64,000 nt of DNA from the IMG/VR virus record IMGVR_UViG_3300011113_000640, positions 256,542 through 320,541 of that record. The stretch is one strand, 5' to 3'. Positions 13,800 to 22,534 of this stretch are shown here, one piece after another. The notes below the pieces were generated by a model. It searched no databases and was not told the origin of the DNA. It saw only the letters and a program-made list of their open reading frames with translations. Made by a program: the position numbers and the translations under genes. Each line of letters opens with the position of its first letter. The first letter of the stretch is position 1.

Positions 13800-13883
13800 T
13801 GGTGCCCCCGGGGTGAATCGAACACCCTTTGAGTTTCCTCGACGGATTACAAATCCGTTGCAATCCCACTATGCGACAGGGGC
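13800..13883 (-). tRNA. tRNA-Thr(UGU) with a long variable arm
   Basis: GCCCCTG/CGGGGGC acceptor, ACGGA-TTTGTAA-TCCGT anticodon arm, 14-nt variable region, TTCGATT T loop, encoded CCA. Confidence 0.85.
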
Positions 13884-16084: not shown

Positions 16085-16160
16085 TGGTACACCCAAGGGG
16101 ATTCGAACCCCTGTTGCAGCCGTGAAAGGGCCGAGTCCTGGGCCTCTAGACGATGGGTGC
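16085..16160 (-). tRNA. tRNA-Glu(UUC)
   Basis: 76-nt cloverleaf, CGGCC-CTTTCAC-GGCTG anticodon arm, GGTTCGAATCC, encoded CCA. Confidence 0.95.
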
Positions 16161-18314: not shown

Positions 18315-18391
18315 TGGTGCCCCGGGAAGGATTCGAACCTTCAACAGCTCCCTTCTGAGGAGAGTGCGTCTACCTGTTGCGCCACCGGGGT
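18315..18391 (-). tRNA. tRNA-Leu(CAG) with a short variable loop
   Basis: CTCTC-CTCAGAA-GGGAG anticodon arm, Leu-like D arm, 5-nt variable loop, A73, encoded CCA; A1-C72 mismatch. Confidence 0.85.
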
Positions 18392-18397
18392 TGACCT

Positions 18398-18988
18398 TTA
18401 CGTTACTTGCGTGGTACCGTTGCCGTTTTTAAAACCAATCTCGCCACCTTCTGCTTCAATCCTTTTGATCACATCTTCAAACAGGATAGGAGCAAAGTCG
18501 GTTTGTTCCACGCACACGCAATGATAACGAACATCAACTATGTCGGTGATCTTGCCATTGAATCCTGGCAACATCACCCGGTTGGCATGCAAGTGCCCGT
18601 GGATGTTGACACCAAAGCGACCAAGGCTTTCTGAGTGAATAGGAATATGGCTGAGTATCATGCCATTCATCACATGGTATCCACGCAGGCTACGGAAGTA
18701 AGGAGTGTAATCCTCATCCTTAAAGATATCGTGATTACCACGGATAAGAATCTTGTCACCATTGAGTCTATTCATAATAGGTAAACTCTTGCGGTTGATC
18801 ACTACATCACCCAAGTGATATACTTTATCGTTTGGACGCACACGCTCGTTCCAGGCCCGGACCATGAACTCGTCCATTTCGTTGGGATCTGTCCAAGGGC
18901 GAAGTTTTGTAACTCCATCGTTACGTGTGAAGCGACATACACCTGCGTGACCAAAGTGCGTATCGCTGACTAAAAATACTGCTGGCAT
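18398..18988 (-). CDS. Calcineurin-like metallophosphoesterase
   Basis: DTHFGH, HLGD, GNHD, GHLH motifs; start MPAVFLVSD. Confidence 0.9.
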   Translation of the reverse strand: MPAVFLVSDTHFGHAGVCRFTRNDGVTKLRPWTDPNEMDEFMVRAWNERVRPNDKVYHLGDVVINRKSLPIMNRLNGDKILIRGNHDIFKDEDYTPYFRSLRGYHVMNGMILSHIPIHSESLGRFGVNIHGHLHANRVMLPGFNGKITDIVDVRYHCVCVEQTDFAPILFEDVIKRIEAEGGEIGFKNGNGTTQVT

Positions 18989-19013
18989 AAGTGCCTCCTT
19001 TCTTTGTAAAACA

Positions 19014-19087
19014 TGGCGCCGGTCTAAGGAATCGAACCTCAATTAACGGTTTTGGAGACCGCTGTAATGCCATTATACCAGACCGAC
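19014..19087 (-). tRNA. tRNA-Trp(CCA)
   Basis: GCGGT-CTCCAAA-ACCGT anticodon arm, G73, encoded CCA. Confidence 0.95.
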
Positions 19088-19093
19088 CAAACT

Positions 19094-19171
19094 TGGAAGT
19101 GAGGGTGAGATTCGAACTCACGGCTTTAGGGATTTGCAGTCCCTTGCATTGGGCCACTCTGCCACCTCACT
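19094..19171 (-). tRNA. tRNA-Cys(GCA)
   Basis: AGGGA-CTGCAAA-TCCCT anticodon arm, U73, encoded CCA. Confidence 0.95.
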
Positions 19172-19254
19172 GTAATAAGCTCATAACAAAAATGTATTGG
19201 ATCCCTGGCAAAATCGCATATCGAATGCGATATATATTACTAGGAGTTATACAC

Positions 19255-19416
19255 ATGGAATACATTTTAACCTTATTTGTTTACTTCAACGGAGATCTCA
19301 TCCGTAAACTGGAACAACCAGTGGCCACTGCGGCCGTATGTCAACAACTCAGTGCAGGTCTCAACTTCCGTGATCCTGCTGTGACAGCCTTTGCCACTTG
19401 TCGTCCCAGATCATAA
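19255..19416 (+). CDS. Small protein inserted antisense within the tRNA cluster
   Basis: TAGGAG RBS then MEYILTLFVYFNG...TCRPRS (53 aa). Confidence 0.6.
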   Translation: MEYILTLFVYFNGDLIRKLEQPVATAAVCQQLSAGLNFRDPAVTAFATCRPRS

Positions 19417-19417
19417 T

Positions 19418-19491
19418 TGGTTGCGGGTGACGGAGTTGAACCGCCAACTGGAGCTTATGAGACTCCCGAGATACCATTTCTCTAACCCGCG
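19418..19491 (-). tRNA. Initiator-type tRNA-Met(CAU) with non-canonical anticodon stem
   Basis: C1-A72 mismatch, G2-C71, C3-G70, A11-U24, A73; anticodon stem GGAGT/GCTCC. Confidence 0.85.
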
Positions 19492-19497
19492 TCTGTT

Positions 19498-19671
19498 TCA
19501 CTGTTCCTGTTCCATTCTACGGAACTGTTCCTGCGCCCGAATCATAGCAGACGCACGATCGATCTTGTTCTGAAACAGTTGTTGCTTTTGTGCTTCGGTC
19601 AAGAATGCCGAACTCACATCATAAGCCTGTTTCACAATAGCGTCGTTGAGTTTTTTGTAATCAATTGACAT
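19498..19671 (-). CDS. Small hypothetical protein (57 aa), first gene after the attenuator
   Basis: Start MSIDYKKL with strong AGGAAAGGA RBS. Confidence 0.7.
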   Translation of the reverse strand: MSIDYKKLNDAIVKQAYDVSSAFLTEAQKQQLFQNKIDRASAMIRAQEQFRRMEQEQ

Positions 19672-19690
19672 CTTTTTCCTTTCCTCTATA

Positions 19691-19724
19691 AAATAAAAAA
19701 CCCCGGAGTGTTTAGTTCCAGGGC
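19691..19724 (-). terminator. Intrinsic terminator (attenuator terminator)
   Basis: GCCCTGGA-9 nt loop-TCCGGGGT followed by TTTTTATTT. Confidence 0.8.
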
Positions 19725-19750
19725 TTTTGAATATCGTATGATGTTTCGTA

Positions 19751-19852
19751 CTATTCCGTGCCCTGAATCTCATCCTCGCAAATCTGCCATAGACCAACCA
19801 CCTCATTGAAGTTGGGTTGTGGTACAAGATAGGTCACTTTGCGATTCAACAT
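19751..19852 (-). CDS. Putative leaderless leader peptide (33 aa)
   Basis: MLNRKVTYLVPQPNFNEVVGLWQICEDEIQGTE; ATG is the 7th nt after the TATAAT box. Confidence 0.6.
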   Translation of the reverse strand: MLNRKVTYLVPQPNFNEVVGLWQICEDEIQGTE

Positions 19853-19858
19853 AGTAGT

Positions 19859-19887
19859 ATTATATAGAGTTATTTATATCTTGTCAA
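19859..19887 (-). promoter_or_regulatory. Consensus sigma70 promoter with TATAAATA late motif in its spacer
   Basis: TTGACA-17 bp-TATAAT; TATAAATA at 19871-19878. Confidence 0.9.
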
Positions 19888-19949: not shown

Positions 19950-20690
19950 TTAATTAAAAGTTTTTGTCAAGCCAACTACCACGGCATTCTTGTAGAGCTT
20001 TTGACCGCTCACAGTGTTTGCAGTTTCAAAAGTTCTTGTTGTGCCAGAGTTGGTGAAATACTTTACACTGACGTCAAAGTCTTTGGGTAGACTGTAAACA
20101 AAACCAGCATTGATGTCATTGTAATCGTAGGCTGTGCTGTTGGCCACATTGGTACGACCATAGTGTGCTACAACAGCCAGATTCTTGATCACAGGAACTG
20201 GTAACTTGCCATCTGCTTGCACGTAGGTTGTGCCTTGAGCATTGGCTGTACCGAAATAGCCATCTCCCAAGGTTCTGCTATACTTGGCAGAAATGATGTC
20301 TTTGTAACCTAGGCCGACATAGCCTTCATAGGTGTCAAAGTTTGAACCAGTTTTTGCTGAAGTGGTGGCACGTGGATAGAAATAGTTGTAGCTACCGATG
20401 TCGATCGAGATGCCCTTGAAGATTTCTTTCTTGTAACCAGCGTAGAGATCACTCTCTACACCTGCACCATTGGTGTAGACTTGGCTAGAAACACTGCTGT
20501 TCCAGTTACCAATGTACAAGCCACTCTTGTGTGCATAGTCGATGCCGCCCTGAACTGCAGGAGCATTTTGGGTTTGGCTAACACCGCGGAAACGGTAGTC
20601 GCTGGTCAAACCTAAATTGCCGGTGAGTTGAGCTTGAGCCGAGGCAACAAAGCCAGCGGACAAGGCCAATGCTAATAATAATTTTTTCAT
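19950..20690 (-). CDS. TorF-family putative porin (TIGR02001-like outer-membrane protein)
   Basis: Signal peptide, SDYRFRGVSQT, PAVQGGIDY, terminal aromatic beta-strand (TKTFN). Confidence 0.85.
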   Translation of the reverse strand: MKKLLLALALSAGFVASAQAQLTGNLGLTSDYRFRGVSQTQNAPAVQGGIDYAHKSGLYIGNWNSSVSSQVYTNGAGVESDLYAGYKKEIFKGISIDIGSYNYFYPRATTSAKTGSNFDTYEGYVGLGYKDIISAKYSRTLGDGYFGTANAQGTTYVQADGKLPVPVIKNLAVVAHYGRTNVANSTAYDYNDINAGFVYSLPKDFDVSVKYFTNSGTTRTFETANTVSGQKLYKNAVVVGLTKTFN

Positions 20691-21369: not shown

Positions 21370-21436
21370 AATTGTCCTTAAAGGTAATTTAATGATATCG
21401 TATCTAGATTTAGTTATGACTCAAGATTAACGGATC

Positions 21437-21462
21437 AAAAAAAACCCGCCGAAGCGGGTTTT
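21437..21462 (-). terminator. Terminator after tmRNA
   Basis: AAAACCCGC-TTCG-GCGGGTTTTTTTT. Confidence 0.9.
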
Positions 21463-21464
21463 GA

Positions 21465-21745
21465 CATTTTTGGTAACAAGGCATGTCTGCCCCGGAGATC
21501 ATGCCGCTAAGGCAAAGACCTCGTCGTTAGCTGCGTTTGCAGTTATCATTTTGCTTCTACGACCAGGCTTTCCCAGTCCTAACGGGTTTCGCATTCCCGT
21601 GTTGCCGTCCGCATTGGCTCACCATGTCGATCCTGATTCATCCCCACCCAAGCATACTGGACAATACACTTGGGTGGAGATGCTGGGATTTGCACCCAGG
21701 TCCATAGTGCCTTCACTTGGAAGGGATTACAACAATTCGAAAAAC
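21465..21745 (-). ncRNA. ssrA: Circularly permuted two-piece tmRNA (outer ends approximate)
   Basis: Acceptor piece (T arm CTGGG-TGCAAAT-CCCAG, CATCTCCA) precedes the coding piece (5' GGGGATG at 21645); G3-U70 pair; tag ORF ANAANDEVFALAA* at 21499-21540. Confidence 0.9.
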
Positions 21746-21746
21746 G

Positions 21747-22004
21747 TTAACTCAACTTACGTGCCATTTGAGGCGCTGGCGTAAACGAATTCACTATAGC
21801 CAAATAACCGTCGGCTGACGCTTCAGTGCTGAATAATCTTATAAAATTGTCTGAGTAAGTGATTCCGTCTGAATTTGTAGTCGTCTGAGTATTAACTGAC
21901 ATGGTAACCGCTGCCACGGCTGGATCAGTGAGATATGCACTTAATTGATTCGTTTCTGCTTCAGTGCGAGCACGTCCGTAAATAACTTCTGTAAAATATA
22001 GCAT
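21747..22004 (-). CDS. Hypothetical protein
   Basis: 85 aa, AAGGA RBS, TATAAATA upstream at 22029-22036. Confidence 0.65.
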   Translation of the reverse strand: MLYFTEVIYGRARTEAETNQLSAYLTDPAVAAVTMSVNTQTTTNSDGITYSDNFIRLFSTEASADGYLAIVNSFTPAPQMARKLS

Positions 22005-22459: not shown

Positions 22460-22534
22460 TGGTAGGCCTTGAAAGAATTGAACTTTCACTCCATCGATTA
22501 TGAGTCGATTGCTTTACCATTAAGCTAAAGGCCC
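22460..22534 (-). tRNA. tRNA(CAU), most likely Ile2 (lysidine type)
   Basis: GGGCCTT acceptor, ATCGA-CTCATAA-TCGAT arm resembling bacterial Ile2, paired 1-72, encoded CCA. Confidence 0.85.

What the first reader, a model, noticed from the sequence alone, without database searches (positions are those of the whole stretch)
18315..19491. tRNA set matches known VapC-type anticodon nuclease targets; fMet anticodon stem is remodelled
Seen: the attenuated cluster holds fMet, Cys(GCA), Trp(CCA) and Leu(CAG). The Met tRNA keeps initiator marks (C1-A72, G2-C71, C3-G70, A11-U24) but replaces the three consecutive G-C pairs of the anticodon stem with A29-U41, G30-C40 and U31-G39. Established: enteric VapC cleaves tRNA-fMet, and mycobacterial VapCs cleave tRNA-Cys, tRNA-Trp and tRNA-Leu(CAG). 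Inference: these are nuclease-resistant replacement tRNAs against tRNA-targeting defence.
Basis: partly seen in the sequence, partly recalled or inferred. Interest (0 to 1): 0.7.

Follow-up and report, generated by a model that had tools for sequence, protein, structure and literature searches.

The report
Phage tRNAs with T5-type initiator
A freshwater jumbo phage carries a small working set of its own tRNAs; its initiator tRNA has the same altered anticodon stem as phage T5's known tRNA-fMet, so it is a new example of a known phage feature that may, but is not shown to, protect against tRNA-cutting host defences.

Summary
Window 18315-19491 (minus strand) holds tRNA-Leu(CAG), Trp(CCA), Cys(GCA) and an initiator-type Met tRNA. 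The Met tRNA has C1·A72, G2-C71, C3-G70 and A11-U24, with A29-U41 / G30-C40 / U31·G39 in place of three G-C pairs.

The stem is not peculiar to this phage:
- It is fixed across the phage's large freshwater family, with compensatory changes in neighbouring pairs.
- It recurs in tRNA arrays of unrelated viruses and bacteria.
- Its core is identical in phage T5's annotated initiator tRNA-fMet and about 395 T5-like phages.
- It keeps G30-C40, the one pair shown essential in E. coli, and changes the base 3' of the mapped enteric VapC cut (A38|C39).

That fits nuclease evasion, but nothing here tests it. The argument that the set matches VapC targets is weak:
- The targets come from unrelated hosts, and the host here is unknown.
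- The Trp and Cys anticodon loops are canonical and unchanged across the family.
- The island also holds Thr(UGU), Glu(UUC), a probable Ile2 tRNA and a tmRNA. These three tRNAs fit codon compensation.
- The set is a remnant of larger arrays in relatives.

Verdict: a new member of a known kind, of moderate interest.

The parts
19418..19491 (-). Initiator-type tRNA-Met(CAU), 74 nt. C1·A72, G2-C71, C3-G70, G4-C69, A73, A11-U24. Anticodon stem A29-U41 / G30-C40 / U31·G39. CCA encoded.
   Evidence: ARAGORN; Rfam 55.1 bits; sequence; alignment with E. coli metY and T5 tRNA-fMet; family covariation.
19094..19171 (-). tRNA-Cys(GCA), 78 nt. U73, loop CUGCAAA, 3-bp D stem, 6-nt variable loop.
   Evidence: (61.7 bits). 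In the family, 34 distinct Cys tRNAs all have U73 and loops C/UUGCAAA.
19014..19087 (-). tRNA-Trp(CCA), 74 nt. G73, canonical loop CUCCAAA.
   Evidence: (54.5 bits). The loop is invariant in 35 distinct family Trp tRNAs and the same as in a Burkholderiaceae MAG tRNA-Trp.
18398..18991 (-). Metallophosphoesterase gene lying between the Trp and Leu tRNAs, conserved at this position in relatives.
   Evidence: Pfam Metallophos 2.2e-05; phrog_547 phosphoesterase 2.6e-47; weak, sub-threshold PdeM match; more than 573 relatives in IMG/VR.
18315..18391 (-). tRNA-Leu(CAG) of type I, 77 nt. No long variable arm (5-nt loop CUGUU), A1·C72 mismatch, C2-G71, A73, Leu-type D arm, loop CUCAGAA (A37).
   Evidence: (50.4 bits). 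There are 25 distinct short Leu tRNAs (24 from relatives plus the window's). They carry only Leu anticodons, A73 is invariant in all 25, and C2-G71 is invariant in the 21 aligned, where 17 of 20 pairs are compensatory.
19859..19887 (-). Perfect sigma-70-type promoter (TTGACA, 17-nt spacer, TATAAT) upstream of the Met-i/Cys/Trp/Leu block.
   Evidence: 12 of 12 matches; 37 promoter-like sites found against 18.0 ± 4.1 in shuffles of the region; sequence.
19690..19852 (-). Leader: a 33-codon ORF (19852-19751) followed by an intrinsic-terminator-like hairpin with a U run (about 19727-19690).
   Evidence: The hairpin and the roughly 80 nt before it are conserved in L082, L083 and L085. No Rfam family matches.
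19498..19671 (-). 57-codon ORF with a ribosome-binding site, directly upstream of the initiator tRNA. Function unknown.
   Evidence: no Pfam, PHROG or NCBIfam match.
22460..22534 (-). Second CAU tRNA, probably tRNA-Ile2 (the AUA decoder). G1·U72, C4-G69, C5-G68. It has its own promoter at 22572-22544.
   Evidence: (73.3 bits). The best E. coli BLAST matches are annotated tRNA-Ile. ATA is 31% of Ile codons. Promoter.
21408..21764 (-). Permuted (two-piece) tmRNA with tag ANAANDEVFALAA.
   Evidence: ARAGORN 'tmRNA*'; Rfam beta_tmRNA 129.3 bits and tmRNA_permuted 117.6 bits; tags of the form ANDExFA[IL]AA in 3 Burkholderiales genomes.
16085..16160 (-). tRNA-Glu(UUC), part of the same dispersed island.
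   Evidence: (53.6 bits); GAA is 79% of Glu codons.
13800..13883 (-). tRNA-Thr(UGU), 84 nt, with an unusual 14-nt variable arm.
   Evidence: (53 bits); ACA is 31% of Thr codons; 82-84-nt versions occur in four relatives.

Best explanation
The segment is part of a tRNA island that probably runs from a strong host-type promoter. The island is a reduced remnant of the large tRNA arrays found in this family of freshwater jumbo phages. All four tRNAs are functional genes that the host's own enzymes would charge.

The Met tRNA is a phage-type initiator of the same class as phage T5's tRNA-fMet. It keeps everything the host methionyl-tRNA synthetase and formyltransferase need, plus the one anticodon-stem pair (G30-C40) needed to license the ribosomal P site. 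It carries the phage-array hallmark A29-U41 / U31·G39.

The island gives the phage its own supply of initiator, Trp, Cys, Leu, Thr, Glu and Ile2 tRNAs and a tmRNA. Translation can then continue when the host tRNA pool is limiting, decaying or attacked.

The altered stem makes the phage initiator chemically different from the almost universal host tRNA-fMet at the junction of anticodon loop and stem. The most likely benefit is that a nuclease aimed at the host's initiator anticodon arm would not cut it.

Shown: the genes, their structure, their conservation, their covariation and their kinship with the T5 tRNA. Inferred: early expression, charging, formylation, use in initiation, and any resistance to nucleases.
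For: - Gene calls and structures.
- Initiator determinants are identical to E. coli metY over pairs 1-6 of the acceptor stem, with A11-U24.
- Across 19 family homologues, G30-C40 is kept in 19 of 19, A29-U41 in 18 of 19 and U31·G39 in 15 of 19. Pairs 27:43 and 28:42 covary freely, and 14 of 20 pairs are compensatory.
- The same AGU-CUCAUAA-GCU core is in T5's annotated initiator tRNA-fMet and in about 395 T5-like phage records. A 1975 paper title reports formylmethionine-specific tRNA coded by T5.
- In an IMG/VR sample of 99 distinct tRNAs with the C1·A72 acceptor, only 15 have three G-C pairs and 24 have au/GC/ug. U31·G39 types lie in tRNA arrays in 28 of 30 cases against 18 of 53 for the other main types (Fisher p = 6e-8).
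- E. coli survives on initiators that keep only the middle G-C pair (PMC5389676).
- Enteric VapC cuts between A38 and C39. VapCs specific for tRNA-fMet occur in several bacterial lineages.
- A perfect sigma-70 promoter lies upstream. This parallels the strong promoter of T5 tRNA-Tyr used against retron Eco7.
- The phage has no formyltransferase, PIN nuclease, RNA ligase, RtcB, peptidyl-tRNA hydrolase or CCA-adding enzyme. It therefore depends on host enzymes and on replacing tRNAs, not repairing them.
Against: - There are no expression data. No RNA run holds the window.
- A terminator-like hairpin lies between the promoter and the tRNAs.
- The host is unknown, so no host nuclease or host tRNA can be compared.
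- The determinants that VapC recognises are unknown.
- U31·G39 is strictly conserved as a wobble pair and is not diversifying. That looks more like a positive structural requirement than an arms race.
- The Trp and Cys loops show no change at all.
- In E. coli the related natural variant au/GC/gu (G31·U39) gives growth defects in minimal medium, and several variants with altered flanking pairs grow poorly at 22 °C. The phage's exact U31·G39 form was not tested. The change probably has a cost whose compensating benefit is not identified.
Confidence: 0.45

Rival explanations
1. One reading: fMet, Cys, Trp and Leu(CAG) were retained together because they are the targets of VapC-type anticodon nucleases in the host, and all four are cleavage-resistant replacements.
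For: All four isoacceptors are documented VapC targets in some bacterium. The naive hypergeometric test gives p = 0.015 with 8 target species among 43. The initiator stem and the Leu loop (CUCAGAA, A37, and no variable arm) are non-canonical. None of the four is easily explained by synonymous-codon bias.
Against: The targets come from Mycobacterium and enteric bacteria, not from this phage's unknown host. The p value rises to 0.058 with the fuller target list and is post hoc. The Trp loop is invariant and canonical in 35 relatives and the Cys loops are canonical. The four are inherited as one block by descent, so they are not independent retentions. Relatives also keep Gly(UCC), Glu, Thr and others alongside them. 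Known tRNA nucleases taken together cover most isoacceptors, so a match is easy to obtain (my own knowledge).
Confidence: 0.12
2. This is plain supply and demand with no nuclease involved. The island tops up tRNAs for a large phage whose codon and amino-acid use differ from the host's, or whose infection shuts off host tRNA synthesis. The au/GC/ug stem is only an inherited signature of an old phage tRNA lineage that works well enough.
For: Thr(UGU), Glu(UUC) and Ile2 match heavily used A-ending codons (ACA 31%, GAA 79%, ATA 31%). Trp makes up 1.9% of residues. Relatives hold near-complete arrays. The stem type is shared by descent or transfer among many phage arrays.
Against: The same three pairs are strictly conserved in tRNAs only 64-85% identical overall, while neighbouring pairs covary. 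That argues for selection on these exact bases and not for drift. Related variants carry a fitness cost in E. coli. Met-i and Trp have no synonymous codons.
Confidence: 0.28
3. The weakened stem changes how the initiator is checked on the 30S subunit by IF3 and 16S G1338/A1339. This would bias initiation towards phage messages or non-standard start sites.
For: The three G-C pairs license the transition from the 30S to the 70S complex and the release of IF3. Variants behave differently on E. coli and rhizobial ribosomes (PMC5389676). U31·G39 is conserved as a specific wobble pair.
Against: No phage IF3 or ribosomal protein was looked for or found. No start-codon anomaly could be established, because the crude ORF calls inflate non-ATG starts. 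The known variants are simply less efficient and do not gain any selectivity.
Confidence: 0.08
4. Self-sparing: the phage itself causes host tRNAs to be destroyed during takeover, and its own tRNAs differ so that they survive.
For: The phage initiator and Leu tRNAs differ from cellular types in the anticodon arm. The phage carries a tmRNA and its own promoters.
Against: No PIN nuclease or other recognisable tRNA nuclease was found in the genome, although most genes have no annotation. The Trp and Cys tRNAs look like host types.
Confidence: 0.05
5. The tRNAs are decaying pseudogenes in a shrinking array.
For: The array is reduced compared with relatives; Gly(UCC), for example, is lost. The Leu tRNA has an A1·C72 mismatch.
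Against: All score 50-73 bits against the Rfam tRNA model. All keep their identity elements and an encoded CCA. Compensatory changes occur across relatives.
Confidence: 0.02

Closest known systems
Bacteriophage T5 tRNA-fMet (AY543070.1 32428-32505, annotated 'initiator tRNA fMet') and its copies in about 395 T5-like phages of Salmonella, Escherichia and related hosts
   Same: The anticodon-arm core is identical: A29-U41 / G30-C40 / U31·G39 with loop CUCAUAA. Both have a 1:72 mismatch, G2-C71 / C3-G70 / G4-C69, A11-U24, and lie in a tRNA region interspersed with small ORFs.
   Different: T5 has U1·U72 and U73 where the window has C1·A72 and A73. T5 has a larger D loop and variable loop. The host and phage family differ, and T5 carries a near-complete tRNA set.
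Natural cellular initiator variants lacking a full set of three G-C pairs (alpha-proteobacteria au/GC/GC; some mycoplasmas GC/GC/gu or au/GC/gu), PMC5389676
   Same: The first pair is A-U, the third pair is a wobble pair, and the middle G30-C40 is kept. Such tRNAs can sustain E. coli.
   Different: The cellular variants have G31·U39, keeping purine on the 5' side. The phage type has the flipped U31·G39, which breaks the run of three purine:pyrimidine pairs. Cellular ribosomes appear to have co-evolved with their variant; the phage must use the host's ribosome.
Phage tRNAs as counter-defence to tRNA-cutting immunity (eLife 2023 hypothesis PMC10264068; T5 tRNA-Tyr against retron Eco7, PMC11555353; virus-encoded tRNAs against PARIS AriB, PMC12409363)
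   Same: A phage-encoded tRNA replaces a host tRNA that a defence nuclease removes. A strong promoter lies in front of the tRNA. The phage tRNA differs from the host tRNA near the cut site.
   Different: Here no host nuclease is known. The change lies in the stem pair that closes the loop, not in the loop itself. The eLife paper states that phages generally avoid encoding tRNA-fMet. Two of the four tRNAs show no change.
Dense tRNA gene arrays on bacterial chromosomes and mobile elements (cyanobacteria, Acidobacteriota, Deinococcales and others)
   Same: They contain initiator-like Met tRNAs with a 1:72 mismatch and the same AGU-CUCAUAA-GCU arm.
   Different: These arrays hold 18-29 tRNAs per 8 kb in cellular genomes. 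The window has a sparse island in a virus.

Membership tests
Bacterial initiator tRNA (tRNA-fMet) | No Watson-Crick pair at 1:72 (normally C1·A72) | tested here: met
   C1·A72 in the window and in all 19 family homologues.
Bacterial initiator tRNA (tRNA-fMet) | Formylation determinants G2-C71, C3-G70, G4-C69 and A73, plus the CAU anticodon for MetRS | tested here: met
   Identical to E. coli metY at these positions.
Bacterial initiator tRNA (tRNA-fMet) | A11-U24 in the D stem | tested here: met
   D stem GAGA/UCUC; A11-U24 in 17 of 19 homologues.
Bacterial initiator tRNA (tRNA-fMet) | Three consecutive G-C pairs at 29:41, 30:40 and 31:39 | tested here: not met
   Only G30-C40 is present; 29:41 is A-U and 31:39 is U·G. 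The middle pair alone is sufficient in E. coli (PMC5389676), so the tRNA probably still works as an initiator even though it fails the classical definition.
Bacterial initiator tRNA (tRNA-fMet) | Is formylated and used at start codons | not testable with these tools
   Indirect only: the title of Chen et al. 1975 on T5. The phage has no formyltransferase of its own.
T5-type phage initiator tRNA | Anticodon arm core A29 G30 U31 - CUCAUAA - G39 C40 U41 | tested here: met
   Alignment of the window, T5 and Pantoea phage AAS21 tRNAs; 24 of 99 distinct tRNAs in the IMG/VR sample have this core.
T5-type phage initiator tRNA | Lies within a phage tRNA array or island | tested here: met
   Window island. 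U31·G39 types have at least 2 neighbouring tRNAs in 28 of 30 cases.
Nuclease-insensitive phage replacement tRNA | The host encodes a nuclease that targets this isoacceptor | not testable with these tools
   Host not identified.
Nuclease-insensitive phage replacement tRNA | The phage tRNA differs from the host tRNA at or beside the cut site | tested here: inconclusive
   Met-i: yes, compared with the near-universal arm (C39 becomes G39 beside the A38|C39 cut). Leu: the loop CUCAGAA and the missing arm are non-canonical. Trp: no, the loop equals the cellular one. Cys: the loop is ordinary. No true host sequence is available.
Nuclease-insensitive phage replacement tRNA | Resists cleavage and rescues infection | not testable with these tools
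   Needs cleavage and plating assays.
Bacterial tRNA-Leu (type II) | Long variable arm | tested here: not met
   77 nt with a 5-nt variable loop. [quoted passage not shown]
Bacterial tRNA-Leu (type II) | LeuRS identity elements: A73, A14, A15-U48, G18G19, and C2-G71 as a guard against SerRS | tested here: met
   A73 is invariant in all 25 distinct short Leu tRNAs and C2-G71 in all 21 aligned. The D loop is AA..GG.A and the variable loop ends in U. E. coli LeuRS does not need the arm.

The most novel reading that the evidence does not exclude
The A29-U41 / G30-C40 / U31·G39 anticodon stem is a widespread viral adaptation. It keeps the single pair the ribosome needs and alters the junction that tRNA-fMet-specific PIN/VapC-type nucleases cut. 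Phage tRNA arrays from T5 to freshwater jumbo phages would then carry an initiator that host defences cannot remove. Phages would not 'avoid' tRNA-fMet, as has been published; they would carry a disguised one that isotype predictors label plain tRNA-Met.
Probability: 0.25. Interest if true: 0.7.

Novelty: new member of a known kind. Interest (0 to 1): 0.4.

Why it matters
If the altered stem protects against nucleases, it would add the initiator tRNA to the short list of phage tRNAs with a demonstrated counter-defence role. The initiator is the one tRNA every translation event needs, and the published view is that phages leave it out.

Because T5 carries the same arm, the idea can be tested directly in E. 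coli with known vapBC modules, without culturing the freshwater host.

Apart from the defence question, the survey shows that initiator-type tRNAs in phage arrays usually lack the textbook three G-C pairs. This matters for tRNA annotation, since they are called elongator Met, and for understanding how much of the initiator signature the bacterial ribosome really requires.

Tried and rejected
- Cultured relatives: megablast of 6 kb and tblastn of an 828-aa protein against cultured phages gave no match. No cultured close relative exists in that collection.
- Host identification failed. The phage tmRNA shares only short T-arm stretches with two Burkholderiales MAGs. Only 3 of 151 sampled Burkholderiales genomes have a beta-type permuted tmRNA. 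Their tags (ANDExFA[IL]AA) resemble the phage's, but identity is only about 55%. BLAST of the initiator against five candidate genomes found nothing useful.
- RNA-repair route: the PF09414 hit is an ATP-dependent DNA ligase. There is no Rnl1, RtcB, PNK-type kinase above cut-off, peptidyl-tRNA hydrolase or CCA-adding enzyme. The metallophosphoesterase beside the tRNAs has only a sub-threshold PdeM match and nothing links it to tRNA repair.
- There is no PIN nuclease or formyltransferase in the phage.
- Neighbouring ORFs have no Pfam, PHROG or NCBIfam family. The 312-aa neighbour matches only viral hypothetical clusters in the protein atlas.
- The leader region matches no Rfam family, and its overall fold is no better than shuffles (z = -0.82).
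- Two older papers (PMC3088637, PMC432352) are not held. Their content is cited only through other papers.
- The A1·C72 mismatch of the Leu tRNA was considered as a second 'initiator-like' mark and rejected. Orthologues have A1-U72, G1-C72 or G1·U72, so it is a step on a covariation path.
Full report
**What is there**

The window is the last 64 kb of a 320,541-bp IMG/VR virus record with CheckV completeness 93% and about 46% G+C. Public runs that hold it are freshwater, lake, river and drinking-water metagenomes.

All tRNA genes of the record lie in the window on the minus strand:
- Thr(UGU) 13800-13883
- Glu(UUC) 16085-16160
- Leu(CAG) 18315-18391
- Trp(CCA) 19014-19087
- Cys(GCA) 19094-19171
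- Met(CAU) 19418-19491
- a permuted tmRNA 21408-21764
- a second CAU tRNA 22460-22534

Each tRNA scores 50-73 bits against the Rfam tRNA model and ends in an encoded CCA. The finding's coordinates therefore cover four tRNAs, a metallophosphoesterase gene (18398-18991) and a small plus-strand ORF (19255-19416).

Read from the sequence, the 74-nt Met tRNA has:
- C1·A72, G2-C71, C3-G70, G4-C69 and A73
- a D stem giving A11-U24
- anticodon stem G27-C43, G28-C42, A29-U41, G30-C40, U31·G39
- loop CUCAUAA

E. coli metY, fetched for comparison, has the same first six acceptor positions and G29-C41 / G30-C40 / G31-C39. M. tuberculosis VapC4 cuts Cys-GCA. VapC11 cuts Leu-CAG (and Leu-GAG and Gln-CUG). 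VapC29/37 cut Trp-CCA. All cut in the 3' half of the anticodon loop (PMC5175351). Enteric VapC cuts tRNA-fMet between A38 and C39 (PMC4105405).

**The remodelled stem is a family trait under selection**

The phosphoesterase gene has more than 573 relatives in IMG/VR. In 85 fetched loci the tRNA content ranges from one or two to 28 per 12-kb locus, so the window's set is a reduced version of larger arrays.

Twenty-five of these loci carry an initiator-type Met tRNA (C1·A72, A73). None has three G-C pairs. In an alignment of 19 distinct sequences:
- G30-C40 is invariant
- 29:41 is A-U in 18
- 31:39 is U·G in 15 and G-C in 4
- 27:43 and 28:42 change freely with compensation
- 14 of 20 pairs show compensatory changes

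This is a functional tRNA in which these particular bases are held constant.

**It is the T5 type**

BLAST against cultured phages found similar tRNAs in several phages:
- Pantoea phage AAS21 and Erwinia phage KEY. The AAS21 copy was inspected and is au/GC/ug.
- Stenotrophomonas phage Moby: GC/GC/ug.
- Aeromonas phage P19: au/GC/GC.

The AAS21 tRNA in turn matches about 395 records of T5-like phages of Salmonella and Escherichia, including T5 itself. In the T5 record the gene is annotated 'initiator tRNA fMet'. Its arm is CUAGU-CUCAUAA-GCUAG, with the same A29-U41 / G30-C40 / U31·G39 core, and it has U1·U72. [quoted passage not shown] I could not read it.

**It is a hallmark of tRNA arrays**

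A scan of IMG/VR used the acceptor CGCGGG...CCCGCA-ACCA with a CUCAUAA loop and put no constraint on the stem.

| Stem type | Count |
|---|---|
| au/GC/ug | 24 |
| au/GC/GC | 21 |
| GC/GC/au | 16 |
| GC/GC/GC (canonical) | 15 |
| GC/GC/ug | 5 |

G30-C40 is kept in 96 of the 99. The au/GC/ug set is only 64-85% identical to the window tRNA overall.

Types with U31·G39 have at least two other tRNAs within 2.5 kb in 28 of 30 cases. The three other common types do so in 18 of 53 cases (Fisher p = 6e-8).

A scan of prokaryote genomes for the arm plus T loop hit at least 120 places. Many are archaeal elongator Met tRNAs. The hits with a 1:72 mismatch mostly sit in arrays of 18-29 tRNAs per 8 kb, in cyanobacteria, Acidobacteriota, Deinococcales and others.

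**Would it work as an initiator?**

Shetty et al. (PMC5389676) showed that the middle pair, G30 above all, is what E. coli needs. The variants au/GC/gu and cg/GC/cg sustain growth, with growth defects in minimal medium and, for several variants, at 22 °C. Natural cellular variants exist (au/GC/GC, GC/GC/gu, au/GC/gu). The phage type differs from those by having U31·G39 where they have G31·U39.

The phage encodes no formyltransferase. That fits the strict retention of the host enzyme's determinants. I judge it very probably a working initiator, but this is inference.

**Does the evidence support nuclease evasion?**

For the initiator, the change sits at the right place. C39, the base 3' of the mapped cut, becomes G39, and the loop-closing pair changes from G-C to U·G. 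VapCs specific for tRNA-fMet are known from Shigella, Salmonella, Haemophilus, Leptospira and Bosea. T5-like phages infect hosts that carry such VapCs.

The general idea is published (PMC10264068). There are experimental cases for other tRNAs (abstracts). The eLife paper says phages generally avoid encoding tRNA-fMet, and the T5 annotation shows that this is not generally so.

Against the idea:
- VapC recognition rules are unknown.
- The wobble pair is conserved and not diversifying.
- The host here is unknown.

**The 'set' argument is weak**

- The Trp loop CUCCAAA is identical in 35 distinct family Trp tRNAs and in a bacterial chromosomal tRNA-Trp. It keeps the A36-A39 run where VapC37 cuts.
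- The Cys loops are C/UUGCAAA, with U73 in 34 of 34.
- A naive hypergeometric test for 4 of 7 tRNAs falling in the VapC target list gives 0.015 to 0.058 depending on the list. The test is post hoc, and the four tRNAs are inherited as one block.
- Thr(UGU), Glu(UUC) and the second CAU tRNA fit codon compensation. The CAU tRNA has C4-G69 and C5-G68, and its best E. coli matches are annotated tRNA-Ile. ACA is 31% of Thr codons, GAA 79% of Glu and ATA 31% of Ile.
- CTG is 21% of Leu codons, Trp is 1.9% of residues and Cys 1.2%.

**Context**

A perfect sigma-70-type promoter lies at 19887-19859. It is followed by a 33-codon ORF (19852-19751), a terminator-like hairpin (about 19727-19690), a 57-codon ORF (19671-19498) and then the initiator tRNA. 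The hairpin and the sequence before it are conserved in the three closest relatives aligned (L082, L083, L085). No Rfam family matches. The Ile2-type tRNA has its own near-perfect promoter.

No RNA repair enzymes, PIN nuclease, peptidyl-tRNA hydrolase or CCA-adding enzyme were found in the genome.

It is 77 nt with a 5-nt variable loop. Its D arm is of the Leu type. It has A73, C2-G71, A37 and an A1·C72 mismatch.

There are 25 distinct short Leu tRNAs, 24 from relatives and the window's own. They carry all six Leu anticodons and no others. A73 is invariant in all 25. In the 21 aligned, C2-G71 is invariant and 17 of 20 pairs are compensatory. Canonical long-arm versions (UAA and UAG only) occur beside them.

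[quoted passage not shown] Annotated tRNA-Leu genes matching nearly the full length of the short tRNA also exist in Xanthomonas phage X1 and Stenotrophomonas phage DLP_6.

**Verdict**

The Met tRNA is a new member of the T5-type phage initiator class. Nuclease evasion is a reasonable but untested reading for the initiator. It is not supported for Trp and Cys, and the set-level argument should be dropped. The idea is cheaply testable in T5 and E. coli.

Noticed in passing
window 18315-18391 (-); L001-L083 relatives (e.g. L004:7678-7754, L010:6684-6846, L052:2753-4076): A family of type I tRNA-Leu genes (76-81 nt, no long variable arm). They carry all six Leu anticodons and only those, with invariant A73 and C2-G71 and strong covariation. 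A review says tRNA-Leu keeps the long arm everywhere except animal mitochondria. Near-full-length matches annotated tRNA-Leu occur in Xanthomonas phage X1 and Stenotrophomonas phage DLP_6.
   Followed up: partly
window 13800-13883 (-): tRNA-Thr(UGU) of 84 nt with a 14-nt variable arm containing a 3-bp stem, which is unusual for Thr. Versions of 82-84 nt occur in four relatives (L001, L024, L029, L048); most relatives have 74-76 nt.
   Followed up: no
window 21408-21764 (-): Phage-encoded permuted (two-piece) tmRNA of the betaproteobacterial type, with tag ANAANDEVFALAA. Some relatives carry tmRNAs with long odd tags such as AKASTGEVTVSGKNIKF... Only 3 of 151 sampled Burkholderiales genomes have this tmRNA type.
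   Followed up: partly
window 19690-19887 (-): A perfect consensus sigma-70 promoter, a 33-codon leader ORF and a terminator-like hairpin lie ahead of the tRNA block. The arrangement is conserved in the closest relatives. It may be an attenuator or may simply mark the end of a short early transcript.
   Followed up: partly
window 22460-22534 (-) with promoter 22572-22544: The second 'Met' tRNA is probably tRNA-Ile2, which decodes AUA after lysidine modification. It has its own strong promoter, and ATA is 31% of the phage's Ile codons.
   Followed up: partly
Genome-contig loci L087, L096, L100, L119, L123, L126, L127, L133, L144, L171 and others: Initiator-like Met tRNAs with a 1:72 mismatch and the same AGU-CUCAUAA-GCU arm lie in dense tRNA arrays (18-29 tRNAs per 8 kb). 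The arrays are in cyanobacteria, Acidobacteriota, Bryobacterales, Deinococcales and Erysipelotrichaceae.
   Followed up: partly
L003, L008, L009, L019, L024, L025, L035, L041, L058 (relatives): Relatives carry a 90-93-nt type II tRNA called Ser with anticodon ACU. An A at the wobble position is unusual in bacteria outside tRNA-Arg(ACG).
   Followed up: no
window 19950-20690 (-): A Gcw_chp family protein (Pfam E 7e-47), a bacterial protein family of unknown function, is encoded just upstream of the tRNA block and ends in a strong terminator.
   Followed up: no
window 19255-19416 (+): A 53-codon ORF with a ribosome-binding site lies antisense between the Cys and initiator tRNAs. Its N-terminus is hydrophobic and nothing is known about it.
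   Followed up: no
literature (PMC10264068) versus AY543070.1: The published statement that phages generally avoid encoding tRNA-fMet conflicts with T5's annotated initiator tRNA and its roughly 395 homologues. These tRNAs are mostly labelled plain tRNA-Met, probably because they lack the three G-C pairs.
   Followed up: partly
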